Source: Stylophora pistillata
Lineage: Eukaryota
Length of the DNA stretch: 64,000 bases
Assembly (NCBI RefSeq): GCF_002571385.2
Contig: NW_019217866.1
Location: 119,529 to 183,528, forward strand
Direction: 5' to 3'
Of the stretch, positions 12,257 to 52,502 are shown one piece after another. The first letter of the stretch is position 1; every line of letters starts with the position of its first letter. The notes under the pieces were generated by a model that saw only the letters and a program-made list of their open reading frames with translations, was not told where the DNA came from and searched no databases. A program made the position numbers and the translations under genes.

Positions 12257-12304
<48 letters not shown>

Positions 12305-12566
12305 GTAATAATAGTAATAATAGTAATAATAATAATTTATTAAATTATTATGATTATATTTTAGGGCTAGTGTAATTTCAATTTTATCTCTTGAACAATA
12401 AAGACGCATTTTTATTTTAGCATCGACAATAATAATAGTGATGTTGATGAAAAGGATTAGATTGTAAATAGGATTTTAATTGAAATCGGAACTACTACTA
12501 GGTCGCTTTTACTTTTAACTTGTAAATAGATATTTGCTTTGAGTGTTAACAAAGTTTGATTATTTA

Positions 12567-12599
<33 letters not shown>

Positions 12600-18440: not shown

Positions 18441-19779
18441 ATGTTACGTTCTATGAAGATCCAAGATCTAAACTCTCACATTTTGTGCGTGTTATGTGGT
18501 GGATACTTAGTGGATGCCACAACTATTGTGGAGTGCCTGCATTCGTGTAAGTAAAATGGCAGAACACAGTAAAGAGTTCAGTAGCGTATTTTGGAATGAC
18601 AAATTTTCGCCGAGAATGTAACATTGATAACTTTACTCCGATTCTAGACTTGAGACTGTTTGAAACCCTTCTCCTCTTCTCCGCAACAATTTCAGACAAT
18701 CTTTAGTCCTGTATTCAATTTTTCCCTTCTTTTGTACCGCCGTAAGCAGGTACCAAAGGTCTTCATCACGTATTCGAAGACGTCTGCCTATCCCGCATAG
18801 CATAAAAAGGAAGTATGGCTGGAACACGGAACTGAGAGCTCCAGTGAATAACTTAATTCTAACAGGAAGATGATCGGAATGATTTAAACAGCGAATATCT
18901 AACAGAATTGCCTCAACTGAAAGGTTTTCTTGGTCGTTCATCTTCTCAAGTTGCTAGCATTGAACGGTGCTGAACACGAGGAGAAATGTTTTACTTTTTT
19001 TCAAAGATTTCAACTGAAGCATGAATTTCTTTGAATTCGTATGATTTGAATAACAAATGATAACAGGGTTAAAACCACATTCGGGTTACGGTTTTATTCC
19101 GGCCTAGTATGAAAGCCTATTCGGATTACGGGAGCGGGTAATCTTCCTTGAAAGCACCAACACTTCACCGTAAACACTCCTTTAAATTGCTTCGTGTGTT
19201 TCAGCGATCATTTGGTAGCTAAAATTGATCGATAAAAACAGTTGAGCGAAACTGAGCTATTTGGCTGAAACAGTTCGCAGCAGGGGTGAAATATTGTTGT
19301 TTTATATTGGTTTTTTTTTTTTTTTTTCTAGTTTGTCGCAGCTGCATTGTGAAATATCTCCAAGCATCCTATCACTGTCCTGTTTGTGATGTTGAAGTCC
19401 ACAAGACTAAACCTCTGCTAAATATCAGGTTAGTATCGAGGTATTCTAAAGTTCATCAAGCTAGCGCCGTTCATCCGCAATGAATTTAGATTGTACCGAA
19501 AATTTGACCATGAGTAAAAAAACCGTAGCCTAAAGAGTGATGATGAACATCTAATTATTTCCGCAAAACCTGCAAGTTGCGAAAAAAAAAAAACAAAAAA
19601 CAAAATGAAAACAAGAATGGTTTAGCTGGTCAAAAAAAAAAAATGAGACCCGTTTAATTGTTAATCGATGTGGTATGAAGGGCTAACGCTCGAAACGTCA
19701 GTTTTAATTTTTTACGGTGGCCAGTTTACATTACCAACTCAGTTGATAAAACCAAATTATCTTGTGATGCTCCCTACCT

Positions 19780-19813
<34 letters not shown>

Positions 19814-25800: not shown

Positions 25801-26775
25801 CCATAAAATTATACCTATTATCTGAATGTTTTGTTGTTGTTTTCATTTTACACTCAAGGTTGAAATGATCCGTAGTGATGAAATACTAGACGGTCACCTA
25901 ACCATCAGAGAAGTTTCCCGAATGTACGGGCTGTACGCCAAGGTAGGTTTGCCAATGTTTAACATTGTTATTAAGCAAAGATTTATAATAGAAAAAGATG
26001 GAATACTAATGGGTAAGTCCCAATAATACAATGGAAAGAATATCTTTGATTCACTTTTACCCGATGAAGTTGTTATAATGCTGGCATCAAAACCTCATTG
26101 CTTTTCAAAATATTTAGCTATGATGGTCGTAGATTTTTCAGTTTTATCACAAGAGTTCATCGCTGAATTGTTAATCTGAATTTTCAAATTTTCAAATTGC
26201 AATATTGACTGACACATTAACCTGTTACACTCTAACATCAGTATGCATATTCTCCATACTGTTCTCTATACATTTCCTAAGGTACTGACAAGGAGAATTT
26301 GTTAAATAATCAAGAGCTTCTTAGTGATCATTTCTCTTATTCTCGTTACCTTATTGAATGATCCAGGGATGATAATGCAATGAGAAATTAGATTTTAGTC
26401 ACTCTTATGGGAAAAAAAGGTTAAGGTGTATTTTTTACTTTTCCTCAGTCCTTTCTTGATCTTGAATATGCCATCCTGGAATTCCCGACAACAGGAGAAC
26501 CATCCATTCCAAGAAAAGTAAAATTAGACATCAATCCATGGACAAAGATCAAGATTAAGAGAAGGAAAAAGAGAAATAAGAAATTAAAACAAACGATGGC
26601 AACAGAACTATTACCAAGAAATGAAACTGTTACGGAATCGAAAAGCGAACAACAAAGTTTACAAAACAATCTCGATGGACTCTTTTTACAAAATGGCGAA
26701 ACACCATCTTTTCCCGATACGCCTCCGACTATTGATGAAATACCAGGCTTGAAAAATATCAATTCGCCCGTTTGA
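18441..26775 (+). CDS. BMI1: Polycomb group RING finger protein, BMI1/PCGF2-4-like, paralog B (~313 aa)
   Basis: Exons 18441-18546, 19332-19428, 20088-20143, 20931-20990, 22039-22123, 22237-22264, 24733-24831, 25859-25942, 26449-26775; GT-AG and phase-consistent (942 nt). Same exon sizes as paralog A except one (60 vs 69 nt); intact RING and RAWUL motifs. Confidence 0.93.
19670..19815 (+). mobile_element. Short Penelope-like terminal fragment
   Basis: GAAGGGCTAACGCTCGAAACGTCAG..GGTGGCCA..GCAGCACCACAGTTTCTTTAGAAAC, same family as 22600-23989. Confidence 0.7.
20150..20470 (+). mobile_element. 3' end of a CR1/L2-like LINE
   Basis: C-terminal-like [21 protein letters not shown], then a short hairpin-like tail TTCAGCTTATAGCTGCAA and AATAAA. 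Confidence 0.5.
22846..23304 (-). pseudogene. Penelope GIY-YIG endonuclease domain (5'-truncated ORF), left arm
   Basis: [32 protein letters not shown] motifs; no RT domain present. Confidence 0.85.
23349..23807 (+). pseudogene. Penelope GIY-YIG endonuclease domain (5'-truncated ORF), right arm
   Basis: Translation identical to the left arm. Confidence 0.85.
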
Positions 26776-34831: not shown

Positions 34832-36281
34832 TCAAACTTGTGGCGACGTTTCTTCTTCGCCAGGATCAAGTTCAAAACTTGGAGGCGTCTCCGGAAATGT
34901 TAGTAAAATAGCACCCTCCGGAGAATGATGTACGGGACTATCCTTATCGAGCCTTATATCCTGCTGTTGGGGATGTTTTCCCTTTTCGTCCACAGTTAAC
35001 TGTTTGGTTTGTACCGCCCCAAAATGTTCGCTTTCCTTTGTTTCATCCCCGTCTTCGTTGCATGTTCTAAGTTTTTTTCTTGGTGGTTCTTTGACTTTTG
35101 TCACGGTATCCTCCTTACAAACGTCCAAGAAAGAGTATTGGAGATCCAGGAAAGACTGCAAACAATAAAGATTAAGATTTAACCATCAGATGAAAACAAG
35201 GGTACAAAAAAAAGACTAATTAATTTATCAGACATAGAGTCGTTAACGTAGCCGAGAGGTCAAAAATTCATTCGCAATTTTCAAACAATGAACAAAAGTC
35301 GATGAATTAGAATCTGTGTAAATCATATATGTGTAGTGCGGTATTAAGAATTTTATATGAAAGCAATCCTCGCAGCAATGAACACTACTTATGTAGCAGT
35401 GAAAATAAGGCCTGAAAAAAAAATTCAGGCCTGTGCCGGAATTGAACCTAAGACCTCTGCGATACCGGGTGCAGTGCTCTATCAACTGAGCAGTCAACTA
35501 TTACAATAGTAGTGTTCATTACTGAGAGAATCGCCTTCATATACAAGGAATAGAGAGACTGAATACTTATTACCATCTTGTTGTTTTGTTTTTGTTTTTG
35601 TGGTTTTTTTTTAACGATTAAGTGTGGTTGGCTGGCATTAGCCACAAAGGTAGCGAGATAAAATATGTATTCAGGCATATCTAAATATATACATGTACAT
35701 ATATGTGATGTCGGTCAACTGGTTCAATGAGACTTTGTTTCTCTTTGTGCTACATGTACACAGTTTTGGAGTGGAAGCAAAGGAAAATGGAGATCAAAGT
35801 TGGTTTGAAAAATTTCAAGTCTTAGGCTGTAGAAAACTTTAACACCACCATTTGTCTAACAGTCTACAAGTCAAAGATCTTACATAAATAAGGCTTTATT
35901 TACATAGAAACGCTTTTAACTGTTTTTTTTGGCATTCTGCAGTCAAATGGAAGAATGCCGAACTTTCGTTTGGTATGAAGTGCTGAATGCGCTAAAATGA
36001 GAGTAGTTTTTAATCATGATGAACTAACTGAACTCTTCTTACTTTCGAGTAGAGCCCATATATTTGCGAAACTTCCTTCATCGTCAACGAGTCGTCAAGA
36101 AGCTCGTCAGAGCGAACAAGTTCAGCCTGAAAAAAATTGGCAAAATAAATCGATTGATCGATCAATCGACCAATTAGTCAGTTAGACAATCAAACAGTCA
36201 ATCCTTTTTTTTTTTTAATGTAATTTGGTTTTATCAACGGAGTTGATAATGTAAAGCTGACATTTCGAGTGAGTAATATTC

Positions 36282-36316
<35 letters not shown>

Positions 36317-39300
36317 CATCCCCTTCATTCATCCATCTTTCATCTGTTTCTACAACTTCACTTACTTATTTATTTACCTGATGTGTGTTAGGAATTGCAA
36401 ACTTCATTGCAAGGAACTTTTTCAAGACGTTGACAGTCACCGCAGAAGGACATCTGAGATAACGAGTCGGGAAAATCTTCAGAGGAAACAAGACAGACAT
36501 CATTCAGAAGCCGTTCGATAACATAAACTAGTTCAAACATCGTTATTTTGAACATAAAGAAAAACAGTCAAACGTTGTTTATCGTTTTTCAACGGTCAGT
36601 CAGTTAGTTTCAAGGAGCTGCGTCACTGAAAGTCCATGCCGAAAAAGTTATGCAAAGGTTTTCAAGGTCGTAATTTTTGTTTCTTTTTAAAGTTCACCGT
36701 CCTATACCATCCTTGTTCTTCTGCTCTACTGTCTCTATACTCTAATAAACGATTCTTTTATGGTGTTATGTACTACATTTAAAGGAAATGTTCTATTTCC
36801 CACCAAATGTCAGCTCAGGAATTCAAGGCTGCCATCCTCGCTTTGTTTCGCTTTGTTCGCATCCCTTGGCTAATTTCCTGAAGTGTCGTAAGGTAGCTTC
36901 CACAAAATCCCACATATATAATCGTACGTACATCTTTTGGTATTTGGAATGCGACGAAAGAGAGATTTCATGTTTACACTATAAACAGTTTATCCATAAA
37001 GGCGCTGTGTTAGGAAAGCGCTATGTCCTCAATTCCGATCAGACTGACGGTCAAAGAATGGTACGTCAGAAAGTAAAAACAAACCTGGCGTTCATTCCAG
37101 ATTCTTTGACGCCTATCGAATGACAAAAAGGAAAAGATGAATTGAAATTACAATAAGTAGAACGCTCTTGAATTTGTAACTTAAATTTGCACTCCCTATT
37201 CTCCTTTGATTTTTCCTTCTTTTTATTTCTGTTATTTCACCAAAAGGTGGTAATGAAAACCGACATACTACTTGAGGTTTACGGTAGCATATTTTGGTCG
37301 CCCTTTCTCTGAGGCAGGAAATTAGTTTAGTCAGATGCCCTTCTCTTTACCGTTCCCCTCAAAATTTTCCTGAGCTCTTCTTTACTTTCACCAACGTTTT
37401 TAAACTCAACCCTAACAGCAGATAGAGACACAAGAAGATGATAAACTAACCTGTAGTATTCCAGAGTGACAAACATCGGATCTTCCATCTTTACCTCGGC
37501 GTTGCTCTTTGAATTCGTTTCGCAATCAGTTTTCACAGCCCCAGTCTCACTTATTAAGGCTGTATCGACTGATAAATCCGTCAATAGAAAAAAAAGAAAT
37601 AAGACAGATTTACGCATGACCTCGAGAATAATGAGAGGATCAATGCTCAGCTCGTAAAATTCTAAGTGTCGTGGTTCAACCGTGCATGATGATTCAACTC
37701 TTCTGGCGATGTTATGCTTGCTACATTCATGATCAAGATATTGACATTTTTAAAACTCTAACAATAGAAATATCAGGAGATTATACTTAGATTTACACTT
37801 TAAAACAGTTTGATCTCAACAGTTAAGTTATTTGGACTCTGGACGAACCAGCTCCAGAACGGAGTTGTTACATAGCATGGTATTCTACGCGCGATCCAGA
37901 TGGATTTGCCTGGGCAAATTAAATGCATCTTATGTAAGATTAGAATTCCAACAACCATCGCAATGCAGTTTTGCTGTTTATCCTCTTACCCGCGCTTATA
38001 GAATTTTCCTCTTCTGATTTGTCTTCGAATTTTGAACGGCGATCGAGTTCGTCTGTAATTCAAAAAGATCGGTTAAGAAACAACAAGATTTCTCTTACGA
38101 AATTTTTTTTTTGTCACGTTACTTTTGTTTAAAGCAACACCTATCAAAGGTTACCCAGATTGCGTAGGTGTAGTATGTACAAGTGCTGAATCATCTTAAA
38201 TTTTCCCAGGAGTGTTGACCAAAGAACAAGATTTTATTTCCATGCGAGATAAAGATAACTCTTTGGCTGCGCAGGCTACACATAAGGTTAAGAAAACAAT
38301 ATTTGAACATTACATTATGTTCTGAAAATATATTTTTTATCATAACTCAAAAGCAATTTTTCCCATCGTCATTAGCGTCCTACCGCAAATACTGTCAGGT
38401 TAAGTAACGTGTCGTACAACCAAAACCAAAGTATAATCGCAGTGGCCAATCAGTAGGAAGGAAAATACCTTTAGAGCCAATGAGGACACAAAGAAAAAAC
38501 AACAAAACTGCCTTAAGTGCGGGAAAAACGGGAGCGGACAAGTTCTGGTTAGTATCTGATTGGTTAAGACTGGAGGTTAGTGGGAGTTTTCTGGACCAAT
38601 CATATATTTAAATAAAGTAAAACCAAAGAAATCCCACAACGTTTGCGACACTCTATATCTCGCTATGATTGGTCTAGAAAACTCGCACCACTTTCTTTAC
38701 CAACCAGATTCAAATCTTAAACCAATGGCGACTTGATCGTTCGCTTTTTCTATTCGCTTTCAGTTTGACCATCTTTCATATTTTGCCTTTTTCTTCATGA
38801 CTGTTGTGTTTACTTTAGTTGGGCTGTACGAGATATTTCTCGATTTAACCGCTCGGCAAAGACTTGTGCTCAGATTCCTCTTGTCCTGACCGATGGAGTA
38901 GCATTGTTTCACCCCATGAGATTACGCTACCATTTCAGAATTTTACGTTATAATTGTTCTTCTCACCATATACTAATCCTGGGACAAGCTTGTTCACAAT
39001 GTCCTGGAGCGGTCGGTCGGGTCTGCCATGGCATAGAAAGGCCAAGGAAAAGAGGATTAAAACATCGAAATACCAAAATATCTCTAGTTTCCCTACATCG
39101 CTACCCTAGAATTCGTATTAGAACTTCGTATTAGAAGCACAGTTCACGATATTTGTACACCAAGCTATTTTTTTGCAATTTTTTATTGTCGTCAAGAGTC
39201 TCACAGATGAACTTCTACCATCTCGAACCAAGGTAAGAAAATTCAGGATTATACTGAGGCATAGCTATTCTGAATTCATACAACAATTGCTGAGTTTCGC

Positions 39301-40144
39301 TACTTTGAACACCTATTATTGTAATACTTTTTGGAGCAAAACTCTTCAGTAACCGTGTTTTATCGCATTGCTAAAAATTAACCACATAAGTAATAATCTT
39401 TTCTTTCGTATGATATATTGTTTCTTTTACTATTAATTAAGAAGGAAAAATATATTGCAAGGGTCAAAGTCTATGATAGGAACAACTGAAGCAAGGACTC
39501 CCGTCGTTAAATTGCAAGATATTTATCTGTTGGGACGGCCTTAGAGCAATTCGGGCTAAAGCCAAACAAACAAGCTTACTTACCTTATATGTAGCAGGGG
39601 TTTGGTCTTGTGGACTTCAACATCACAAACAGGACAGTGATACGATGTCTGAAGGTATTTAACGATACAGCTTCGACAAACTACAGAAAAAAATCACAAA
39701 ATTTTCTAACCGTGAAAGCCAGAGAAGAATCAAAATATCTTGTGAACTTTTCAAATATCTGCATACATCCATCACAATGCTTTGGACTTGTTGAGGAATA
39801 TTAGAGACGAGTGAAATTATATCTTAGACTGGCTAGATCGATCTCACGAGAGAGTACATTAAAAAGAAAACGTAATATCTTAAATAACCGACAGCGGTTG
39901 AAGATTTGCAACAAGTGCTCGCTTTACTCAGAAACCTGCTTCAACCAGTTTCTTGCACGGCTAATGCTGAAATGACCAACACTGAAAAACATGAACTGAT
40001 GATGATAAATCAGTTTATAATTAATGCGAACTTACAAGAATGTAGGCATTCGATAATCGTCGTAGCGTCAACAAGGTACCCAGAACACAACACACACATC
40101 AAGTGAGGATTGAGTTCTTCAAGCGGCATCTTAAGTAAAGACAT
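34832..40144 (-). CDS. BMI1: Polycomb group RING finger protein, BMI1/PCGF2-4-like, paralog C (~329 aa)
   Basis: Exons (high-low) 40144-40036, 39680-39584, 39022-38967, 38052-37990, 37568-37451, 37308-37269 (donor could be 3 nt earlier), 36476-36378, 36126-36043, 35155-34832; phase-consistent (990 nt). [41 protein letters not shown]..; [22 protein letters not shown]. Confidence 0.92.
35320..35545 (-). mobile_element. Degenerate copy of the tRNA-derived repeat family at 1282-2444
   Basis: Minus strand reads GCTCAGTTGATAGAGCACTGCACCCGGTATCGCAGAGGTC..CAGGCCTGAATTTTTTTTTCAGG. Confidence 0.7.
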
Positions 40145-41007
40145 GTTGGCGATAACGATGGCAGTAAATAAGCGTGATCTTTGAGCGCCACTATCGTGTG
40201 TCTAGCGAGAAAAACTTAAGACTTCCGGTCCACTGTTGTGCGTGTTCAGCGAAAACGCATCGAGACTTCCGGTCGCACCCTCTCCAGTATGACAAAGGAA
40301 GATGAACACTGAAAAAGGATAAAGATTAAAAAATGGCAGAGAACAAAAATTCAACCACGCTAGAAATCCAACCCAACAAGATAATGGTTCTAGCAATCGA
40401 TAAGATAGCATAGGTCTCACGGCAGTTTTTCCGTACGCCTGAATTTACTGAAAATGCATATGTCCTCATGATCTGTAGGCCAACGGCTTCGAGTAAACCC
40501 TGAAGAACTTGAACTGCTATCAATATTCGTGATTTCAAGTGATTCTTAGTCGCAATTCCTTTGGGAGATTCGATGATGAAGGTCGATGTTCGAACTATGG
40601 TTGAAGCAAAAAGGAAAAAATTGCCAACAGATATTTTACACTGTAACCAGAGAACTTAAGTAGTGACGTTTTTGAAACGCGAACAGCAACCGGAAGAAGT
40701 ATAAAATCAACTCTGGTGAGCTTTGACGTCAATGGATCGACTGAAGAGTCGTCGTTTTAGCATTTTAAATCAGCATGTGCCGACCACAAAGGTGTAGTAA
40801 GCATCAGGAATGATAAGAACTTTTAACTTTCGGCTTTCGTCCGCGTTTAGAAAACGTTTCAGTGTTTTTAACCTCCCTGAGTTTTTGTAACTTACACTTA
40901 ATATAATTCTTAACGTACCGTTCAACCGCCCACGATTAGTAAAGAGATGAAATTGAGTTAATTATATAAAGAATAGCTCACAGATCTGACTCGATAGTAA
41001 CATTGTA

Positions 41008-41396
41008 CAGTGGAACCTCGAGTTAATGAAGTGCCAAGGGACTGGGGAAATTGGTTCGTTATATCGAGGATTCGTTAGTGGAACGTCGATTTAACGAACC
41101 CGCCTCTATATAACAAAGTCCTCGGTACAAAAAACGATACTTCAGGTTCAGCCCGGCTAAAGTTATAGTAAAATGTACGACACAGAACCTCGATCTAACG
41201 AACCCTCGATATAGGGAAGCAATTTCCCCAGTCCCTTAGCACTTCGTTAAATCGAGTTTCCACTCTATCGAGGTTTTATGGCATACATTTTACTGTAACT
41301 ATAGCCGGGCTGAAACTGAAGTATCGTTCTTTGTACCGAGGACCTCGTTATATAGAAGTTCGTTGTATAGAGGTTTGTTATATCGAAGTTCTACTG
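41008..41396. mobile_element. Tc1/mariner-pogo-type MITE, TA target duplication
   Basis: TA|CAGTGGAACCTCG ... CGAAGTTCTACTG|TA; nested internal inverted repeats. Confidence 0.7.
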
Positions 41397-43948
41397 TAGC
41401 AGTTCATTTCATCATTTGAGGTCTGGGTTAATTCTATCGATAGCGAACTGAATTACTTAAATGGGAACCGTTATCTCAGACTTTACATAATACAATTCCT
41501 TGCGTTTAGTTGAAACACTGTTTTTCGACCCTTTACAACTTTAACATCAATATACATATTCTCCACACTTTTCTCTATCAGAAGCAGATAATGCGCTCCT
41601 GTCTCCATACTTCAGTTTCCTAGGGTGCTGACGAGTAGAATTTGTTGGACAATCAAAAGCTTCGTTAGATACTGATCATTTCCTTTATTCTCCTGACCTT
41701 AATGCTTGATTCAGGGGTGATATTGTATGGAGAAATTAGATGTAAGTCACTGTTAGGGGCCAAAGGGTTGACGGAGAAGTAAAATCGAATCATAGCTTAA
41801 GGATTTCACTTTGAAGCTTTTAACCTCTTAACTTAAAAAGTTGTGACTGCTTTTATTTTCGCTATTTACAAGATAATGTGAAAAGAAACAAAGCAGCTGC
41901 TTCTAAGTTGAAAAATCTGACAAGTTGTTCGTTGTTCGTCAGCCTAACGAAACACATTCCTCCAAAAAAAGGGATGCAATATGTTTAGGAGAATGAAACT
42001 TGCGACAACTCTACCATGAAAAACCTCAATCTGCGGCAGATCAATCATGTACATTCGTTACGAATGAAGATACTTTTTCTGGGCTCCTAGCGAAGTTTTC
42101 TTTTTAAGTTAACTTAATTCTCCGTTAAACGTTCAGTTCATGCCTAAGTATGATTTTTTAGTCCTATCACTTTGCTATTACATCTCTTAGTGAGAATATT
42201 TGCGATGATTAGTCAACTTGGCGACCCATATTTCACTGTACGGCCCGTTAACTTCAAAAAAGTTTTCGAATTAAAATCTTCCCCCTCTATTTGAACCCAA
42301 GGATACGATAATTATCTTAATAATCTCGTTTTTTCATTCGGTTCATACTGTATCTTATGGAGTCTCGCATTTTCCGTTCGGATTAATGGCCCCACACGTT
42401 TCACGCTTTAGCCGTAATTTTTACAGTACGGACCTCAACCTCGAACTCGATTAGTAAGAGGTATAAAATGAGTAGAAACGGCACAAGTGTGTACGTCATT
42501 AAAAACACTAAATATTCAAAAAGGAAGAAACGATATGGCAGATGTACAATTGGCGAAGACTCATGTATACCTTGGACAACCCAGCAAATTATTATTTTAA
42601 ATTTACAGGATGAAGATCTTACCGTAGAAGAAAATTAAATTTCAAACAGAAAATCAGAAAATCATTCCACGTTGCAGCAAATTTAGCTTCAGACCAGCCC
42701 AGCCCAGTGATATGTACTTTCATCTTGACTAACAAACGAAAGTCGGAATCTCCTCGAAGTAGAATTATCCAACCATTTTATCTTTAGGTCCGAATAACTA
42801 CCGCCTCACTGTGTGTAGACTAAATTTATCTTTTTAAAGTCGATTTTGACAAGCAGTTCAGTACACAAGTGGGCAGCAATGCGAAGTTGATTAAACACAT
42901 GGCCCCAAGCTTTGTCGAATATTTTCGCGGTGGTTGATTTTTGCAAAACGCAGTCTTAGATGATACTAAACAAAACCTATATTTGCCGTAATTTTTAAAG
43001 TATTTGCTGCTAAGAAATTTAAGAAAAGTATGTACCGTCCATCAATATCGCCACCTAACTCGGCAGGTTCAACAAAGCCCATACGTTCGCATGCAGATTG
43101 GCTGGGTCGTACATGCGAAAAAACTCCTGTGATATAATGGGATATAATGTGAATATTGTTCAATGTCAGCACTTGCGCTGTCATTTACTAATCGACGAAA
43201 AGTTATTTTAACCACGTCAAAATTTGGTTGATCTTTAAAGATAAGACGTAAGAAATTCACAGTCCAATATAGCTTTTAAGGTCTCGATAGCTGTAAAGTA
43301 AATCTGTATTTAGATAAATCAAAGTACAAAATAAGCAAGGGTGATCCATTAAACTCCACTGATTACCACGAGGAAAGCCTTTCGTCGAAGATCTCGGCCT
43401 TAATATTTTTAATGCGGCTACGATGATTTGTGAGTGAACCAAATTGTCTCCACGCTAAATAAAGTGTGCATATTCAATTTGAGGGGCTAAATTCTAAAGA
43501 AACGTCCTCAGTAGCAAATGATCTCGGAAGGGAGATTTATATGTCATGTTAGTCATTCCCGGCTGAAGGAGTTCAGGTTCTCTGCCCATAAACCGGTGGT
43601 TGTTTATCACAATTACCAGGTGAATTGGCAAGTTGGATTGGGATTTCATAAACGTCTAATGCAATGGCAAGGACCAACAAAGGTAAATAAATACAGTAGG
43701 TATCAAGTGCGCCATGTAAATTTATAACAACGAGTAGTTGAAAGATACGCACAAATGGTCACGTTCTGTGACAAAATTACCCTCCAATGTACGCTTAGCA
43801 TTCATTAGAAAGGTGTTTCACTCGAAGCGATACCAAAAGAAATTATCAGTAAATTCTCAAACATTTGCCGACCGTAGCAACACGGATATATTACCTAACG
43901 AACAAGAACAAATCGAGTTTAAATGAGAGGATTAAAATGGCGAATTAC

Positions 43949-44045
43949 CTCTTGATTTTGGTGGTACTGCGACTCGCATATTCCGTCAAAAGAGTTAGTT
44001 CACGTTGTCTATTATGCAAATTACGTAAACCACGTGACTCCTTAC
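43949..44045 (-). promoter_or_regulatory. Putative promoter and non-coding first exon of PCGF paralog C
   Basis: Minus strand reads GTCACGTGGTTTACG..CAACGTGAACTAACT..AGTACCACCAAAA..GAG|GTAATT. Paralog A reads GTCACGTGATTACG..CAACGTGTGCTAACT..AGTAACCGCCAAGAAAA..CG|GTAATT. Confidence 0.5.
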
Positions 44046-45202
44046 TAGGGCCAGTTCCCTCAAAGCAGGATCTCAACGGGGTGATGGCTTTTACGGCTAA
44101 CATGTAAAACTTTGGCCAATTTCCGGCCATTGGTTCATATCTTTCCTTTGTAGTCACAATAAAAATTTTCACAGTTAACTTCTTTTAATACAAACGGTTA
44201 AAATTTGTCTATTTCCACGCCTAATGGATAAATTTTTTAGCCGCTTTACGAAGCTGAGACCCACTAAGGCAATTGCTCCTCGTGAGGGACCAGTAATGGT
44301 ATAGCTGTCACAAAGCCGCATACTGGACCTGTTAAATACACATTTAAGGAATAAAAAATATTTAAGCCTTCCTGATTATGCATTGTACTTTGATTTTACG
44401 ATGGCACTCAACCGCCGAGAAGCGCTCTGAGTCTAAGAGGTTGGAAAAGGACTGAAAGCGACAAACTTAAGTGCTGCACGAAGGACAGATCGCAGGAGCA
44501 CTGCTGATTCATGCAGGTCGTGCGCCATCGATCTGCATCGCCGGGGGAAACTGAGTGACTAGTTCCAAAAAGTCGGCTTCGAACATTTTCTATGATCAGA
44601 CCAGTTTGTTCCAATCAGTTTTGCACAGCGAGGTACGCGAAATGACTTATCTTGACACTACCTCTCAGACAAACAAACTGACAACGCAAACATGGTCTGC
44701 TTACCCTCTGACACCTACAGGTGATTTGCATCTATTTCCTCTTTACAATATCATCCTTGAGTCAAATATCATGGTCATGAAAATGGAGGAATTGTTCAAA
44801 ACTTCCACAAGCCTCTGATTGTCGAACAAATTCTCCCCATTTGTACAATGAGAAGAACAGTCCGGAGAATATGAACATAGTGTTGAGATGAAAAGGCGGA
44901 CACACAACCGGTTTTTTTACATCAGTTTTATTCGTCGTTGACGAATACTACAAAATGAACGTATTTGATTATGTTCATTGCTTAACAAAATGCAGAAAAG
45001 GGTAAGTTTTATATACCATCTTTTTCACATTGACTGTGGCCAAAAGGTGCTACGAAATCTCTTTATTTGCACTATTTGTCAATGCAGCACAGTATGTGTT
45101 AAGTCTCCTTAACAAATAAGGGATTAATGAATACACATTTAATTTAATCATAAAAATATATGTCTTTGTTTGCTAAATCTTCCTAAGGTTTGGGACTGAA
45201 CA

Positions 45203-48200
45203 TCAGTTATTAGAGGCCTTCTCTACACTTTTGCAAGCATCTTTCAGTTTCCCGACCAGATCCTACCACAAAAAGAAAAAAATTAGAAAATTAAAAGATC
45301 ATAATCACATGCACGGGTATCTGAAGAAAAAAAGGGGTAAGTTTTTGAAAAAAAAAAAAAAAAAAAAAAAAGTGGTGCTGCATCGGTGAGGGTATTTTCA
45401 GATAATTTGAATTTATCAACCGAGTGAGCACTAATCGTCAGAGCGAATGACGAAAGGCTGACGTTCTAAAACTCAGCTTTATAAACTCCTTACGGTAGCC
45501 AATTTACATTATCAACGAATTGATAAAACCAAATGATCTGAAGAATAGATTTCTACCCCTCTACAGACACTCTACAAAAATCGAATTAAAGGTTTGCGTA
45601 GTAACAAAACTTTAACAGAACTAAACGTTCATTAACCTGCAATTGCTCCATTGTGCATGAAAATTGTACATCCTCTCCTTTAGCCTTTCCTGCTTCCTGG
45701 GACGAGAAAGAGATCAACCAAGTTCTCAACAATATTTGGGGATATTTCAAGGAATGATGGTGGAATAATAAAATAATTCAAGAAGACACCATAATGACGT
45801 GTCCATGACAAAACAAAGTTAATTAAATTAAATTAAATTTTTCACATTTTTCTGAGTGCAATTATGTGATTCTCAAGAATTACACATCAAAGGAGGCTAT
45901 TACGGAAAGATTCTGTTGAAGAAACCAGACAAATTGGTACAACTGACCATAGAAGTTTAAGTGGAAACAGGGAAACTAACATTAAAAATGCAGAAATTCC
46001 ACAAACTGCACATGTACTGTACCTCAGTTTTTAGTGTGATGAGATATGTGGGTTTGTTTACTTTCTCCATTTGATTATTCTAATAAATGGAAGAAAAACA
46101 AGTTTCGTGTAAGGAAGAAACTCAGAAACAAAAAAAAAGTTTTGTTTGCCACGTTAACATAGGGAACATGACTAAGAAGTTATAGCATCTTAATTGCAGT
46201 CAAGAGGTCCTGAGCTTTAAACTAACCATGAACACAGGGTGGACCTAAAGGACTGAGTTTTATAGAAATTGGTTGCCTCTGACTGTTGTTATTTCTGAAA
46301 CAGACGTTTTGGCTAATGCTTAAGCCTTCATCAGTGATATCATATCACTGATGAAGGCTTAAGCATTAGCCGAAACATCTGTTTCAGAAATAACAACAGT
46401 ATCAGAAATAACAACATATCACTGATGAAGGCTTAAGCATTAGCCGAAACGTCAGTTTCAGAAATGACAACAGTATCAGAAATAACAACATATCACTGAT
46501 GAAGGCTTAAACATTAGCCGAAACATCTGTTTCAGAAATAACAACAGTCAGAGGCAACCAATTTCTATAAAACTCATGACATCTCCTGACTACACTTTTT
46601 CAATTTTTAGACATAAAAGACTCTTTGGAAACTCAGTTACCATGGGGTGAAAAAGGTCATCTGATGTTTCAAAGCCTAAGTATCACGAAATTTCTTCTAA
46701 ATTTCTCTTAATTTTTTTTTTTCAAAAGAGCTGGGTAAGTTTTAATCACCTTTATGTAATAGTCTAGTCTCCAATCCACATCCACAACATGAGGAAATGA
46801 ACTTCCTGTTCTAAAATTAGGAGCAAAACATAAAAAAAACCCATTTAAAATGTAATCATTCATCAGAATCAAATACTTGGAAGTCAACAATTCATGGCAA
46901 ATCTTTCTTTTAACATTCCAGGTTTAATTTTCACTTTATATGACAGCATAAAACCTATCTAATATATTAGTTATTGATTAATTTATTAATTAGCACTAAA
47001 ACAAACAGAGCTACCCAATGAAGAAAACTAAACTATTTACCTGGCAAGAAGCGCTTCCAAATTAGGTTTATAATCCTAAAAAGGTGAAATATCAACAAGA
47101 GAGACAGTAAATTACAGTATAAATCTATCATCCTCAATATGAAGATATTTCTACTTGAACACTTCAAATTTTGTACACTATAACAGGGCTCGAAATTGCG
47201 ACCGATACAGTCGCCAATGCGACTAAAACTTTTAACTTGGTGACTTAAAACTCGAGTTTAGTCGACACTTTGGCGACTATGAACAATTGAGAACATTAAA
47301 AAAACCTGAAACCTGACATTCGTTTTTCTCTATGAACCAACTGTTGATTGTGTTGTCAATTTCCTGCGAAAAACTAAAACACACAAAACAAGCCAAAAAT
47401 CCTGGAATCCCGGCCTCAGTTCACGAGTAATTAATTTTCCAGTGAAAACACGCTCAAGAAAATCAGCATAATCCAACCAGCGGATTTACATTGAGATCAG
47501 GAGGTGCGGTACTAAATGGCTATCCGCCATGTTTGATAAATGTTTGATGCCTGCGTATCTTACGATTTCTTGCATGCGATGTGACAGATTCTCTTTCCTA
47601 AAGTAACCCTGAAATTTTCTTATTACTTTTTTTGACTTCAAACTTTCTAAATGATTAGACTTAAGAAAAAAGCTGCTTGAACTTCCAAAATCCTATTAAT
47701 TAGTAATTCTTCCTACATGCTGCCATACTTTTCCTTGTAAATGACAAAAGGTTGATAGTTTCTAAAGAAACTGTTTGGGGCTGCGTCGGTGGATGTAACG
47801 AAATAATTTGGATATATCAACAAAGTTGAAATGGTAAATTGGCCACCGTAACAATTACAAAAGCTGACGTTTCGAGCGTTAGCCCTTCGTCAGAGCGAAT
47901 TCGCTCCGATGAAGGGCTAATGCTCGAAATGTCAGCTTTTGTAATCGTTACGGTGGCCAATTTATCATTTCAACTTTGTTGATATATCCAAATTATCTTG
48001 TAAATGACACTTGAGAATTTGATTTTATTCCAAAATATCACTCTCTAACTGATAAACTTTTCTGTTCTCATAACTTGTTTACAAGATGTCTGATTGGGGT
48101 TGCAAGGAGAAATTGCATGTTAGTCACTTCTGGGAGTTAAAGGGTTAAGAAGTTTAAAAATAGATCTCACAAGAAAATTAACATCAAAAGGATCCAAAAG

Positions 48201-50518
48201 CCACGAGCAAACTTCAAACCCATTTTCAGCACATTTTTTTAAATCTATTATAAGGCAGAAGGCAGGCAACAAAAATATTTAAGAAATCATTTTAACCTGG
48301 CATCCTAACTAAGTATGTATTTTTTGTTATCATGAATCATGGGTCTGGTGTTTCTTTTTTGTTACATACCAAGAATTGTTTGGTAAAATACTCTATTCTG
48401 TCAGTGCCCCATTTGCAGTCCTCCAACACAGAACTGCAACATAATCAAGCTCCTTTGTAAGTATTATCAAAGGATAAGAAAGTATATAACAGGGCTTGAC
48501 ATTAACTTTTCAACTTAGTAGCCAAGAGGCTAGTGATAACATAGATTTTACCATAATTTCAGTTTGTTTACTAGCCAAACTGGCTGGTGGAAATCGAAAA
48601 TCACTTGCCAAAACTGAATTTCTACTAGTCTGTGGCTAGTTGGCTACCATTAGTGTCAAGCCCTGTATAAACACTCTTTTCTTTGAGTTTTCAAATCTCT
48701 TCATGCAATTTCAATTACTCACACAGGACTCTCCACTAATGACAGCCAACTAGCCACAGACTAGTAGAAATTCAGTTTTGGCTAATGGTTTTTTCGATGC
48801 CAGTTTGGCTGGTAAACAAAATGGAAATTATGGTAACATCTAAGTTGTCATTAGCCACCTGGCGAGTAAGTTGAAAAGTTAGTGTCAAGTCCTTCTTACA
48901 GGTACACAGTAATTTATATTCAGAAATGCAATGGTTAAAAAATCATCAAAATACTGCATTTACAATGTTCATCTACTCAAAAAATGCATATTCATGATGG
49001 AAAAAAATATAAAAATGATTCAACAAGCACCCCTCTCTACTCTCAGCTGTCATCTAATCAAGGCATCGCATGGTTGTAAAAGGATTTTGAGCCCTAAGAA
49101 AAAGCCATAACAACACACCTATAGAACAACAATACAATAATTTTTCAGGTGTGATTTGATGTTGCCAATCAGCTGCTGAGTCACATCACCTACCTTTTGC
49201 TTCACTTAATCATTAATAGAGTAGACTTTTTTAAAGTCAATTATTAGGCCTAAGATAATGTTTCTATAATACACAATATAATACAAGATGCATGCTTCTA
49301 GAAGTGGAATTTCTCTTCAAGAGTTCAACTCAAGGAGAAATTCCATATCTATGCCTGCCTATGAACTATTCTCTATGCGTTTCAAAAAGTTCATATCAAC
49401 CTTAAAGAAGATGAATCACAATCCATCTTGATAGCCTCTAATATCATCGTCACTAAGCCAGCATATACTTGCTTTAGGGTTGCTGAATCAACACTAGAAA
49501 TGTCTTCATCCCCTGCAGAAAGAAAACAAGATTTTCTGCTAGTTAATGATAAGCCTTGTTACAATTAACACTGATACCAATACCAAGTAGTGTCATGTGC
49601 CAAACTATTTAAGTCCTTCTATTAAGCTTTGGGTTTGATTCCTCTTTCCAAAATGCGTGGGGTAGGTGGGTTACTAACCAACATTTCCTACCCTCCTCAG
49701 AGTTGAAAATTTCAAACAATTTCACACAGAATGGCAGAGATTTAAGGAAACACCCTATAGAAAAATGGACTTGGTTAGCAAATCTAAACATTTTATTCGG
49801 TTTTCAACAAGATATTAATTTAAAACAGGGTAAAGTTGAACCTGTATTTAAGGGGCACTGCATCAAGCAGCCACCTGTATAAAGTGGTCAGTTGTCAAAG
49901 TCCTGAAGTTCTATCCTCTGTAATTTTCCCTTCTATTGGGCCTGAAGTTCTATCCTCTGTAATTTTCCCTTCTATTGGGCCTGAAGTTCTATCCTCTGTA
50001 ATTTTCCCTTCTATTGGGCAGTCACCTCTATTAAGTAGTCCTCGACACCTTTTACTGAGTCACAGTGGCATGTTTCTAATGTCTTCTGTCCCTACTGAAC
50101 AATCACTTTAAATGGAACTAATTAAATAAAACTAGAAACAAGCTCACAAATACATTTACTCCACGTTTATCTCTCGTAGTTGTATTTTAGAGTGAGTTTA
50201 TGTACTTTAAGAGGCCAATTATGGATTGAAACGGCATTTGGAGAGATTTCCGTATAACCCCATAACATTCAAAAACAAAGCCGTAATCCCAAAGGTAATC
50301 CGTTGCTTTGCCTCTGCTTTTTTTTATCCAAGAATTGCATGCACAATAAAGTACGGGGTTAACTGATCGTTAAACTTACTTTTAAGGGCATCTTCGTCCT
50401 GTTTCTTCACCAGAATATCTAAGGTAATTGGAACCAAGTTTCGAAAACTACGATCCCCAACACGCGACGAATCTCCGCAAAGATTGAGCCCTTCGATCGC
50501 TACACTGCTTAACTCCAT
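45203..50518 (-). CDS. COMMD3: COMM domain-containing protein 3 (195 aa)
   Basis: Exons (high-low) 50518-50380, 49512-49401, 48433-48370, 47075-47041, 46810-46750, 46079-46023, 45696-45637, 45262-45203 = 588 nt, phase-consistent. MELS.. start; COMM domain FPHVVDVDWRLDYYIK..PTYLITLKTE..VQFSCTMEQLQDLVGKLKDACKSVEKA. Confidence 0.95.
45319..45545. mobile_element. Short inverted Penelope-end insertion, 10-bp TSD
   Basis: ATCTGAAGAA at 45319-45328 and 45536-45545; degenerate family sequence. Confidence 0.65.
46254..46576. repeat. Inverted-plus-tandem repeat of 74-bp units carrying hammerhead-like cores
   Basis: Units start at 46341, 46415 and 46489 (+), with one inverted copy at 46254-46340. Each reads CTGATGA-AGGCTTAA(G/A)CATTAGCC-(G/A)AAAC(G/A)TC. 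Confidence 0.8.
47734..48009. mobile_element. Short inverted Penelope-end insertion, 13-bp TSD
   Basis: CTTGTAAATGACA at 47734-47746 and 47997-48009; palindrome centred near 47899. Confidence 0.85.
47863..47896 (-). ncRNA. Minimal type I hammerhead ribozyme motif (Penelope-associated)
   Basis: GCT-CTGACGA-AGGGCTAACGCTC-GAAACGTC-AGC: intact CUGANGA/GAAA/GUC core, stem I GCT/AGC, stem II GGGC/GCTC, palindromic ACGT stem III. Confidence 0.65.
48490..48665. mobile_element. MITE with CAGGGCTTGACA termini (hAT-like); second partial inverted copy at ~48735-48893
   Basis: CAGGGCTTGACATTAA ... TTAGTGTCAAGCCCTG. Confidence 0.65.
49902..50019. repeat. 39-bp tandem repeat x3
   Basis: CCTGAAGTTCTATCCTCTGTAATTTTCCCTTCTATTGGG, three exact adjacent copies. 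Confidence 0.9.
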
Positions 50519-50775
50519 AGCAACGTTCTCTCTTCAATTTTTCTGAATAGGGGCTACATACATGTATAGATTTTCTACGCTGAAAAGACAATGTTTTGAA
50601 TTCCTTGTTGAGACTCTTTCACAACTCTCGCGTAATTCTCGAATGGTGGTTGGTTCATTCCGCTGACCATGTGGATGCACTATATGTTAAATGAGTGCGC
50701 TTAAAGCAAGTATCTGGTACACGCTTTTAGTCATTCATTATTATTTTGGTAGCAGGGGGTTGATTATCTACTACC
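50519..50775. promoter_or_regulatory. Putative bidirectional promoter of COMMD3 and CISD3
   Basis: Only 257 bp separate the divergent start codons. Confidence 0.65.
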
Positions 50776-52502
50776 ATGGCCTTGTTCTGGCGAAATTCTA
50801 GACTCCTTGCTAACCAGCGTTTCTGTCTACAGTTGCAGCAGGTAAGGCACGGATAGCTTTAATTGTAAGTTGTGATGTGCTTGGTATGCGGTTCTTACGT
50901 AACACTCAGTCAGGACTGCTGAAATGCTAACTGCACTGTAAACGTTCCATCAGTATCTTTGATTTTAGCTCCTAAGGCTATTAAGAGAAAGATTNNNNNN
51001 NNNNNNNNNNNNNNNNNNNNNNNNNNNNNNNNNNNNNNNNNNNNNNNNNNNNNNNNNNNNNNNNNNNNNNNNNNNNNNNNNNNNNNNNNNNNNNNNNNNN
51101 NNNNNNNNNNNNNNNNNNNNNNNNNNNNNNNNNNNNNNNNNNNNNNNNNNNNNNNNNNNNNNNNNNNNNNNNNNNNNNNNNNNNNNNNNNNNNNNNNNNN
51201 NNNNNNNNNNNNNNNNNNNNNNNNNNNNNNNNNNNNNNNNNNNNNNNNNNNNNNNNNNNNNNNNNNNNNNNNNNNNNNNNNNNNNNNNNNNNNNNNNNNN
51301 NNNNNNNNNNNNNNNNNNNNNNNNNNNNNNNNNNNNNNNNNNNNNNNNNNNNNNNNNNNNNNNNNNNNNNNNNNNNNNNNNNNNNNNNNNNNNNNNNNNN
51401 NNNNNNNNNNNNNNNNNNGCAACAGTTATTGCAGCTAAGGAACCATTCCAAGTGGAACTTGTTGAAGGGAAGAAATATTCTTGGTGCAAGTGTGGGCTAA
51501 GTAAAAAACAGGTAGTTACTTCACATGCCTATAAGGTTGAGTTAGCTCATAATAAATTAACATAACCTGAGACTAACACTGTTGATGACTAACACTGTTT
51601 GGGTGTGATTGTCTGGCTAAGGATTGACATGGAAAGAGTCATTTTCTATGGCTGACATTTGGAAAAAAAATCTCAGGGCAAGTTCTAATCAAAATCAGAT
51701 TGTTAGGATCGCTCATAACTGGACAATCACACTACAAATTAATGTCAAAGTTTTTCTGTGTAGAATTATTAAAAGTTGTATTTGTCATCTTCTGGGTGTA
51801 GTGTAATAACCTTTAAAATGTTGTATTTGTCATCTTCTGGGTGTAGTGTAATAACCTTTTGTATGAATTTTTGGTGGCATTAATTTTTCTGAGAGACATC
51901 TCACTTTTGTTTGTGACTTTAAAGGGTGCTTTCTGTAGACAGACCCTAAAAACTACTTAAATTAATTTTTTTGGGAAGAGAGAGAGCCTTTCAGACTTTT
52001 CTGTGACAGAACTGTTTGAACAGGTGGGTAAAGTGATTTTTGGAAGGTTGGTATAAGGGTTTTTTTTTTTCTCGTGTTGCTAGACAACAGGAAACAACAT
52101 CCCTGAAAGAGATTATATACCTGGTACCTTTGAAATTTGTCAAAAGCTTGAATCCAAAGGTGATGTTTAAAAGTTGTCACCAAAATCCACTTTTCACGAA
52201 ATGACAAAAAAAAGGTGCAGAGAGGGGAGTTACCTTAATTAAGAGCCAGTGGAAGATCTGCTCTGAAGTTGTAATGAAAAAAATAGACCAATTTCTATTG
52301 AGCGACCTTTTTTTTAAGTGCACTTAATTCCTTGCAGCCATTCTGTGATGGAAGTCATAAAGTGACTCAAATCAAGCCAGTTCGGTTTGTGGCAGAAGCA
52401 ACCAGCTCTGAGATCTTCCTGTGCGGATGCAAACAGACAGGTTCAGCACCGTTTTGTGATGGAACTCATGCCACAGAAAAGGTCCAGTCTGCAGATTTAT
52501 GA
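50776..52502 (+). CDS. CISD3: CDGSH iron-sulfur domain protein 3 (mitochondrial, two CDGSH motifs); partly hidden by an N gap
   Basis: Exons 50776-50841 (Arg-rich presequence-like MALFWRNSRLL..), <51419-51511 (PFQVELVEGKKYSWCKCGLSKKQ) and 52338-52502 (PFCDGSH..LCGCKQTGSAPFCDGTH). Gap at 50995-51418. Confidence 0.9.

What the first reader, a model, noticed from the sequence alone, without database searches (positions are those of the whole stretch)
34832..52502. CISD3-COMMD3-PCGF block unites the neighbours of both human BMI1 and human PCGF2
Seen: PCGF paralog C (-), COMMD3 (-, directly upstream, same strand) and CISD3 (+) are consecutive genes. Established: human COMMD3 lies directly upstream of and co-oriented with BMI1/PCGF4 (10p12), while CISD3 adjoins the ohnolog PCGF2/MEL18 (17q12). 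Inference: this window preserves an ancestral three-gene microsyntenic unit that vertebrate genome duplication split by reciprocal loss, and C is the ancestral-position copy. Such deep linkage suggests a regulatory or splicing constraint. CISD3 is upstream and divergent here, which may differ from the human arrangement.
Basis: partly seen in the sequence, partly recalled or inferred. Interest (0 to 1): 0.85.

Follow-up and report, generated by a model that had tools for sequence, protein, structure and literature searches.

The report
Ancient CISD3-COMMD3-Polycomb gene neighbourhood in coral
In this coral genome a BMI1-type Polycomb gene, COMMD3 and CISD3 lie side by side; the same neighbours occur in an annelid, in part in a limpet, an acorn worm and a sea anemone, and split over two human chromosomes, so the neighbourhood predates the cnidarian-bilaterian split.

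Summary
PCGF-C (-, 34832-40144), COMMD3 (-, 45203-50518) and CISD3 (+, 50776-52502) are real, consecutive genes.

- **Identity:** PCGF-C is BMI1/PCGF2-4 type. COMMD3 is the single COMMD3 ortholog in the genome. CISD3 carries two CDGSH motifs.
- **Assembly gap:** it does not break the linkage. CISD3 exon 1 lies left of the gap and exons 2-3 lie right of it. A gap-free chromosome assembly of another coral, Oculina, has the same order.
- **Other genomes:**
  - Owenia (annelid) has SPAG6-CISD3-COMMD3-PCGF2/4.
  - Lottia has COMMD3-CISD3-SPAG6.
  - Ptychodera has COMMD3 next to a PCGF gene.
  - Nematostella has CISD3 head to head with COMMD3.
  - Human 10p12 holds COMMD3-BMI1-SPAG6 and 17q12 holds CISD3/PCGF2.
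- **Inference:** the block is ancestral. In bilaterians it has four genes, and it was split in vertebrates.
- **Limits:** gene orientations differ between lineages. No partner lay within 10 kb in four other genomes. This argues against read-through splicing as the general constraint.

This is a new, clean example of a known phenomenon, ancient microsynteny.

The parts
34832..40144 (-). PCGF-C, a BMI1/PCGF2-4-type Polycomb RING finger gene. Coding exons: 40036-40144, 39584-39680, 38967-39022, 37990-38052, 37451-37568, 36378-36476, 36043-36126 and 34832-35155 (with stop). One further lysine-rich linker exon probably lies between 37451 and 36476.
   Evidence: Pfam RING and RAWUL on exons. PDB best hits are BMI1. 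Splice sites were read from the sequence. The exon 37451 to 36476 junction does not close in frame (phase 2 into phase 0), so a small exon is missing from the model.
40145..45202 (.). About 5.06 kb spacer between the COMMD3 stop and the PCGF-C start codon. No recognisable gene.
   Evidence: No Pfam match in its seven longest ORFs. No blastn similarity to the Oculina spacer. PolyA RNA-seq contigs hold up to 0.55 of the sampled words of 39700-45699, which hints at transcription but is not resolved.
45203..50518 (-). COMMD3 ortholog. Coding exons: 50378-50518, 49401-49512, about 48364-48435, about 47040-47081, 46750-46810, 46023-46079, 45637-45696 and 45203-45262 (with stop).
   Evidence: Collinear tblastn of named COMMD3 proteins over residues 1-195. 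COMM_HN and COMM domain. PDB hit to COMMD3. The Oculina ortholog scores 154.6 bits to COMMD3 against 27 to COMMD5. Only locus in the genome.
50519..50775 (.). 257-bp head-to-head (bidirectional) promoter region between the COMMD3 and CISD3 start codons.
   Evidence: The start codons are 257 bp apart here and 241 bp apart in Oculina. The Nematostella gene ends are 353 bp apart. A motif, TGGTCAGCGGAATGA, is shared with Oculina.
50776..52502 (+). CISD3 ortholog (two CDGSH motifs). Exon 1 at 50776-50841, exon 2 readable at 51419-51511 (its 5' edge is in the gap), exon 3 at 52338-52502 (with stop).
   Evidence: Pfam zf-CDGSH twice. PDB 6avj CISD3 and two-domain bacterial CDGSH proteins. Exon 1 matches the Oculina exon 1 peptide.
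50995..51418 (.). Assembly gap inside CISD3 intron 1, reaching into exon 2.
   Evidence: The reading frame is open at the right edge. Exon 1 lies left of the gap. Gap-free Oculina has the same gene order. The letters were not filled.
7601..13756 (+). PCGF-A, a paralog of C (context).
   Evidence: tblastn of C exons. 81% identical to C in conserved blocks.
18444..26762 (+). PCGF-B, a paralog of C (context).
   Evidence: tblastn of C exons. 92% identical to A and 79% to C.

Best explanation
The window holds a surviving piece of a very old gene neighbourhood. [quoted passage not shown] In bilaterians SPAG6 belongs to the same block.

Vertebrate genome duplication made two copies of the block, and complementary gene loss followed. 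This left COMMD3-BMI1-SPAG6 on human 10p12 and CISD3/PCGF2 on 17q12.

In this coral the Polycomb gene was multiplied locally into four copies. Copy C kept the place beside COMMD3.

What is conserved is nearness, not orientation, because small local inversions have flipped single genes repeatedly. In hexacorals CISD3 and COMMD3 share a promoter region of about 250 bp, head to head. In spiralians CISD3 instead sits head to head with SPAG6.

Shown: gene identities, contiguity across the gap, and the neighbourhoods in eight other genomes.

Inferred: common ancestry of the block and reciprocal loss after duplication.

Not shown: why it persists. I think the likeliest cause is regulatory DNA of the Polycomb gene and shared promoters interleaved with small housekeeping neighbours, helped by slow rearrangement in these lineages.
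For: Identities.

Gap spanned by one gene.

Gene orders, written with COMMD3 on the + strand:
- Oculina: CARD gene, CISD3(-), COMMD3(+), PCGF(+), no gap.
- Nematostella: CISD3(-), COMMD3(+).
- Owenia: SPAG6(-), CISD3(+), COMMD3(+), PCGF(-) of 1382 aa. That PCGF scores 294.7 bits to BMI1 against 126.6 to PCGF1.
- Lottia: COMMD3(+), CISD3(-), SPAG6(+). The SPAG6 exon scores 221.6 bits to PDB SPAG6.
- Ptychodera: COMMD3(+), then a PCGF(-) of 317 aa. Its last exon hits only BMI1, weakly.

Human arrangement from papers:
- COMMD3, BMI1 and SPAG6 are the three genes of one 263-kb region (PMC3325425).
- A COMMD3-BMI1 readthrough is annotated (PMC6862657).
- CISD3/PCGF2 are a convergent overlapping pair (PMC6746723).
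Against: - No partner lay within 10 kb of COMMD3 in Capitella, Asterias, Priapulus or Saccoglossus. The Saccoglossus locus is 27% N.
- In Nematostella the gene after COMMD3 is a thymosin-repeat gene, not a PCGF.
- Orientation differs between lineages, so the ancestral order cannot be fixed.
- The PCGF class of the Oculina neighbour was not tested, and that of the Ptychodera neighbour is only weakly supported.
- No sponge, placozoan, ctenophore, Hydra, amphioxus or gar was examined.
- No full PCGF1-6 tree was built.
- Only 10 kb on each side could be seen.
Confidence: 0.8

Rival explanations
1. The block is ancestral but is held by nothing. It is neutral leftover synteny that survives only in slowly rearranging genomes and decays elsewhere. 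Local inversions keep neighbours together by default.
For: The linkage is lost, or not within 10 kb, in four of the ten genomes sampled around COMMD3 (this window and nine others), and PCGF is missing beside COMMD3 in Nematostella. Orientation is variable. No conserved non-coding sequence was found in the COMMD3-PCGF spacer between two corals. Owenia and Ptychodera are known as conservative genomes (my own knowledge).
Against: Survival of the same unrelated neighbours in cnidarians, spiralians, a hemichordate and both vertebrate ohnolog regions is far more than most gene pairs show (Irimia et al. 2012, PMC3514665, abstract). Zebrafish bmi1 and commd3 share a 22-kb transposon-free region (PMC2241635). 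The head-to-head distances are very tight.
Confidence: 0.4
2. The linkage is kept because COMMD3 and the Polycomb gene are made from a common read-through or spliced transcript, as in the human COMMD3-BMI1 readthrough.
For: The genes have the same strand and order in this coral, in Oculina and in vertebrates (PMC6862657). RNA-seq contigs cover about half of the sampled words of the 6-kb stretch that holds the spacer.
Against: COMMD3 and PCGF are convergent in Owenia and Ptychodera, so a joint transcript cannot be the shared reason. The spacer is 5 kb here and 7.5 kb in Oculina.
Confidence: 0.1
3. The adjacency of CISD3 to COMMD3 in this window is a scaffolding artefact of the assembly gap.
For: A 424-N gap of estimated length lies between COMMD3 and most of CISD3 (finding note).
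Against: CISD3 exon 1 is on the COMMD3 side and exons 2-3 are on the other side, in the right order, strand and phase. Gap-free Oculina and Nematostella have the same head-to-head pair.
Confidence: 0.03
4. The shared neighbours arose independently (convergence or chance) in corals, spiralians and vertebrates.
For: None specific. Orientation differences could be read this way.
Against: Four unrelated gene families recur as immediate neighbours in at least five lineages (PMC3325425, PMC6746723). The chance expectation per lineage is of the order of 1e-4 per pair (my own estimate).
Confidence: 0.02

Closest known systems
Ancient conserved microsyntenic pairs and blocks of metazoans (Irimia et al. 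2012, Genome Res, PMC3514665; the genomic regulatory block model with bystander genes)
   Same: Unrelated genes stay immediate neighbours from cnidarians to vertebrates. One member, PCGF2/4, is a developmental regulator and the others are small housekeeping genes. After vertebrate duplication the block was kept in complementary pieces.
   Different: No conserved non-coding elements or regulatory interactions were shown here. Orientation is not conserved. I could not check whether this block is in that paper's lists, because its supplements are not held.
Human COMMD3-BMI1 locus on 10p12 with an annotated readthrough transcript (PMC6862657; PMC3325425)
   Same: COMMD3 lies directly upstream of, and is co-oriented with, a BMI1-type gene. 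Both proteins are clear orthologs.
   Different: The coral has four PCGF2/4 copies and CISD3 on the far side of COMMD3. SPAG6 is on another scaffold. Chimeric RNA was not tested.
Human CISD3/PCGF2 convergent overlapping pair on 17q12 (PMC6746723)
   Same: CISD3 and a PCGF2/4-family gene lie in one neighbourhood.
   Different: In human the two genes are tail to tail and overlap. In the coral CISD3 is head to head with COMMD3 and upstream of PCGF-C. The human orientation matches Owenia with COMMD3 removed.
Anthozoan PCGF5-PCGF3-PCGF6 gene cluster (Gahan et al. 2020, bioRxiv 10.1101/2020.03.18.997064)
   Same: A cluster of Polycomb RING genes in anthozoans, on the same scaffold here (candidate exons at C83:749-776 kb).
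   Different: That cluster holds the non-canonical classes. The window holds only PCGF2/4-type copies: four here, against two reported for anthozoans.

Membership tests
PCGF2/4 (Psc/BMI1/MEL18) class of Polycomb group RING finger proteins | N-terminal C3HC4 RING finger followed by a RAWUL domain | tested here: met
   zf-C3HC4_2 halves on exons 1 and 2. RAWUL at 37.3 bits (cut-off 33.5) on exon 36378-36476.
PCGF2/4 (Psc/BMI1/MEL18) class of Polycomb group RING finger proteins | Closer to BMI1/PCGF2 than to PCGF1, 3, 5 or 6 | tested here: met
   Exon 1: BMI1 53 bits against PCGF6 42, PCGF1 40, PCGF5 34. Exon 2: BMI1 49 against PCGF1 44, PCGF6 27, PCGF5 25. The RAWUL exon hits only BMI1. PCGF3 and PCGF2 have no PDB chain, so they were not compared. 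The other PCGF-like exons in the genome are only 50-61% identical to Owenia PCGF2/4, against 69-81% for A-D.
PCGF2/4 (Psc/BMI1/MEL18) class of Polycomb group RING finger proteins | Placement inside the PCGF2/4 clade in a PCGF1-6 tree | not tested
   No full-length PCGF reference set could be fetched (length filter on exon queries).
COMMD3 | COMM_HN N-terminal domain plus C-terminal COMM domain, about 195 aa | tested here: met
   COMM_HN at 26.2 bits (cut-off 23) on exon 2 and the start of the COMM domain on exon 5. Eight exons are collinear with residues 1-195 of named COMMD3 proteins.
COMMD3 | Best match to COMMD3 among COMMD1-10; single ortholog | tested here: met
   The only COMMD hit for the window exon is COMMD3. 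The Oculina ortholog, 73.5% identical to the window exons, scores 154.6 bits to COMMD3 against at most 27.4 for others. One locus in the genome.
CISD3 (MiNT), two-CDGSH-domain protein | Two CDGSH [2Fe-2S] motifs in one short chain | tested here: met
   The first motif spans the exon 2/3 junction and the second lies in exon 3. zf-CDGSH has 2 stretches, E 6.4e-12. PDB 6avj CISD3 at 41.8 bits against CISD1 at about 16.
CISD3 (MiNT), two-CDGSH-domain protein | N-terminal mitochondrial presequence | not tested
   Exon 1 (22 aa, basic) is present and conserved with Oculina. No targeting prediction was run, and about 7 codons are unread in the gap.
Ancient conserved microsyntenic block | Orthologous, non-paralogous genes adjacent in distant phyla on both sides of the cnidarian-bilaterian split | tested here: met
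   Two corals and Nematostella, against Owenia, Lottia, Ptychodera and human (PMC3325425, PMC6746723).
Ancient conserved microsyntenic block | Retention caused by cis-regulatory constraint (regulatory elements of one gene inside its neighbours) | tested here: inconclusive
   There is no nucleotide conservation in the spacer between this coral and Oculina, but the species are distant and only 10 kb was available. No chromatin data.
Readthrough or conjoined gene pair (as human COMMD3-BMI1) | Chimeric transcripts joining exons of both genes | not testable with these tools
Only the share of words held by RNA runs is known.

The most novel reading that the evidence does not exclude
The block is a true regulatory unit. 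Enhancers or Polycomb-response-like elements controlling the canonical PRC1 gene PCGF2/4 lie within or around COMMD3, CISD3 and SPAG6, and this has locked these unrelated genes together for more than 600 million years. In cnidarians and vertebrates, transcription reading through from COMMD3 into the Polycomb gene would be an ancient, conserved way of feeding PCGF2/4 expression.
Probability: 0.2. Interest if true: 0.7.

Novelty: new member of a known kind. Interest (0 to 1): 0.5.

Why it matters
- It gives the well-known human COMMD3-BMI1 pair, and its readthrough gene, a history reaching back before the cnidarian-bilaterian split.
- It ties the BMI1 and PCGF2 regions together as two halves of one ancestral block: SPAG6, CISD3, COMMD3 and PCGF2/4.
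- It is a compact textbook case of reciprocal gene loss after whole-genome duplication.
- It supplies a positional marker for telling which copy of an expanded Polycomb family sits in the ancestral place.
- It defines a small, testable locus for asking whether canonical PRC1 gene regulation constrains genome order.
- It does not by itself reveal a new mechanism.

Tried and rejected
Read-through therefore stays untested.
2. The search of protein representatives with COMMD3 exon 1 returned mostly exon-sized ORF fragments. One Nematostella fragment, P0011, served as a bridge to full-length COMMD3 proteins.
3. Look-ups that found no record: Exaiptasia, Acropora palmata and Lingula COMMD3.
4. No partner within 10 kb in Saccoglossus (much N), Capitella, Asterias and Priapulus. 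This is absence within 10 kb only.
5. No blastn similarity between the COMMD3-PCGF spacers of this coral and Oculina.
6. The shared promoter motif was not found in the Nematostella, Lottia, Owenia or Ptychodera loci.
7. The supplements of the two microsynteny papers are not held, so prior listing of this block could not be checked. No paper in the library links COMMD3 with microsynteny in invertebrates, or CISD3 with COMMD3 as neighbours.
8. Full PCGF1-6 phylogeny. Only local comparison of exon blocks was done.
9. The PCGF-C model does not close in frame between 37451 and 36476. A lysine-rich candidate exon near 37150-37230 has no clean boundaries.
10. Coral SPAG6 is on another scaffold (C182), so its linkage here is unknown.
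Full report
**What the window is.** The window is G000:C83:119529-183528 of a 398-Mb, 5513-contig assembly. By its protein matches and the RNA runs that hold it, this is a scleractinian coral. GC content is 35-40% and genes are split by introns.

**The three genes.** On the minus strand a Polycomb RING finger gene (PCGF-C) runs from the ATG at 40144 to the stop at 34832.
- Exons 1 and 2 carry the two halves of a C3HC4 RING. Exon 36378-36476 carries the start of a RAWUL domain, above Pfam's cut-off.
- Against the PDB, the RING exons score best to BMI1 at 53 and 49 bits. PCGF1, PCGF6 and PCGF5 score 25-44 bits.
- The RAWUL exon hits BMI1 chains only.

COMMD3 lies upstream on the same strand (ATG at 50518, stop at 45203).
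- I first saw it as COMM_HN and COMM-domain exons.
- A search with exon 1 gave a Nematostella fragment. That fragment led to named full-length COMMD3 proteins from corals, anemones and many bilaterians.
- These align collinearly over residues 1-195 to eight window exons.
- The Oculina ortholog scores 154.6 bits to human COMMD3 and at most 27 to any other COMMD.
- The genome has one COMMD3 locus.

CISD3 lies on the plus strand. It has two CDGSH motifs and matches human CISD3 (6avj) and two-domain bacterial CDGSH proteins far better than CISD1. The 5-kb spacer between COMMD3 and PCGF-C has no ORF with a Pfam match.

**The gap, tested first.** The 424-N gap (50995-51418) does not lie between genes. 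It lies inside CISD3.
- The reading frame of exon 2 is open at the right edge of the gap.
- CISD3 exon 1 (22 codons, 50776-50841, with a canonical donor) lies left of the gap, 257 bp from the COMMD3 start codon. It matches the first exon of Oculina CISD3.
- Comparison with the Oculina exon structure shows that the acceptor and about seven codons of exon 2 are unread.
- One gene with exons on both sides, in the right order, strand and phase, is good evidence that both sides belong together.
- Oculina's gap-free chromosome has the same four-gene order: CARD gene, CISD3, COMMD3, PCGF.

**Paralogs.**
- The window holds two more PCGF2/4-type genes, A (+, 7601-13756) and B (+, 18444-26762).
- A fourth, D, lies 44 kb before the window at C83:~72,000-75,661.
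- In five conserved exon blocks (139 aa, compared locally only), A and B are 92% identical. C is 79-83% identical to the others. All four are 61-63% identical to the Owenia PCGF2/4 over the first four blocks.
- This is a lineage-specific expansion, in line with Gahan et al., who reported two PCGF2/4 genes in anthozoans and called them lineage duplicates.
- Nothing in the sequences marks C as older. Its claim to the ancestral position rests on being the copy beside and co-oriented with COMMD3, as in Oculina.
- No COMMD3 or CISD3 exon lies near D.

**Other genomes.** I used COMMD3 as the anchor and read 10 kb on each side. Orders are written with COMMD3 on the + strand.

| Genome | Order seen |
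|---|---|
| Nematostella | CISD3(-), 353 bp, COMMD3(+), then a thymosin-repeat gene; no PCGF |
| Oculina | CISD3(-), COMMD3(+), PCGF(+) |
| Owenia fusiformis (annelid) | Arm-repeat gene(-), CISD3(+), COMMD3(+), PCGF(-) of 1382 aa |
| Lottia (limpet) | COMMD3(+), CISD3(-), Arm-repeat gene(+) |
| Ptychodera (acorn worm) | COMMD3(+), next called gene a PCGF(-) of 317 aa |
| Capitella, Asterias, Priapulus, Saccoglossus | no partner within 10 kb |

- I fetched the Owenia PCGF protein (P0150). It scores 294.7 bits to BMI1 over residues 1-247, against 126.6 to PCGF1.
- The last exon of the Ptychodera PCGF hits only BMI1, at the matching position, but weakly (E 0.18).

**A fourth member.**
- The Arm-repeat gene beside CISD3 in Lottia is SPAG6, at 221.6 bits to PDB SPAG6.
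- The Owenia gene has the same length and the same Pfam pattern, and starts with the same eight residues.
- In human, COMMD3, BMI1 and SPAG6 are the three protein-coding genes of one 263-kb region (PMC3325425).
- The bilaterian block therefore has four genes. In the coral SPAG6 is on another scaffold.

**The human side.**
- CISD3 and PCGF2 are a convergent overlapping pair (PMC6746723).
- A COMMD3-BMI1 readthrough is annotated (PMC6862657). The databases echo this: a PDB BMI1 chain is labelled 'COMMD3 protein', and a duck COMMD3 protein is named 'BMI-1 isoform X2'.
- Zebrafish bmi1 and commd3 share a transposon-free region (PMC2241635).

**Reading.** The same unrelated neighbours recur on both sides of the cnidarian-bilaterian split, so common descent of the block is by far the simplest account. 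Vertebrate duplication followed by complementary loss explains the two human regions.

Orientation is not conserved. Human 10p12 (COMMD3 then BMI1, same strand) looks like the corals. Human 17q12 (CISD3 and PCGF2 convergent) looks like Owenia with COMMD3 removed. The ancestral orientation cannot be decided, and single-gene inversions must have been frequent.

This speaks against read-through splicing as the general reason for the linkage, because COMMD3 and PCGF converge in Owenia and Ptychodera. It fits either constraint on nearness or plain slow decay. Shared short promoters are a local feature only: CISD3 with COMMD3 in hexacorals at 241-353 bp, and CISD3 with SPAG6 in spiralians at 217-690 bp. 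I found no conserved non-coding sequence in the spacer between two corals. That test is weak.

**Limits.**
- One PCGF-C junction remains open.
- Only 10 kb on each side of COMMD3 was visible.
- Amphioxus, gar, Trichoplax and sponges were out of reach.
- No paper in the held library describes this block outside vertebrates. The large microsynteny lists could not be read.

**Verdict.** The main inference is supported and extended to SPAG6. The constraint idea is open, and its splicing version is unlikely. This is a new example of a known kind of feature.

Noticed in passing
G000:C83:~72000-75661 (L013:2010-5661), minus strand, 44 kb before the window: A fourth PCGF2/4-type paralog (D) with all conserved RING and RAWUL exons. 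With A, B and C this makes four copies within about 90 kb, against the two PCGF2/4 genes reported for anthozoans.
   Followed up: partly
L004:14303-20480 (Lottia) and L006:1-7412 (Owenia): SPAG6 sits head to head with CISD3 in both spiralians (217-690 bp apart). Human SPAG6 is the next gene after BMI1. SPAG6 therefore belongs to the same ancient block.
   Followed up: yes
window 50519-50775; L003:9760-10000: The COMMD3/CISD3 bidirectional promoter shares a 15-base motif, TGGTCAGCGGAATGA, between this coral and Oculina. It was not seen in the other loci.
   Followed up: partly
window 53284-57426 (-); L003:1-3314: A gene encoding a CARD domain, a coiled coil and an F5/8-type-C-like domain lies beyond CISD3. 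Oculina has a CARD plus F5_F8_type_C gene in the same place and orientation, so the coral synteny extends to four genes.
   Followed up: partly
window 39700-45699: PolyA RNA-seq contigs from several studies hold up to 55% of the sampled words of this mostly intergenic stretch. This may be a long UTR, read-through, an unannotated transcript or carry-over of unspliced RNA. It could not be resolved.
   Followed up: partly
   Followed up: no
window 29270-30313 (+): An intronless 347-aa ORF between PCGF-B and PCGF-C that looks like a rhodopsin-type GPCR by eye; it was not searched against Pfam.
   Followed up: no
G000:C83:749480-776116, G000:C84:40938-41084, G000:C144:10817-17117: Further RING and RAWUL exons of other PCGF classes. 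The group at 749-776 kb on the same scaffold is probably the anthozoan PCGF5/3/6 cluster of Gahan et al., about 590 kb from the PCGF2/4 array.
   Followed up: no
G000:C2755:79-210: A second CISD3-like exon (55% identical) on a very small contig. It could be a paralog or foreign DNA.
   Followed up: no
window 60496-61711 (-): Long ORFs that by eye look like retrotransposon remains near the end of the window; they were not searched.
   Followed up: no
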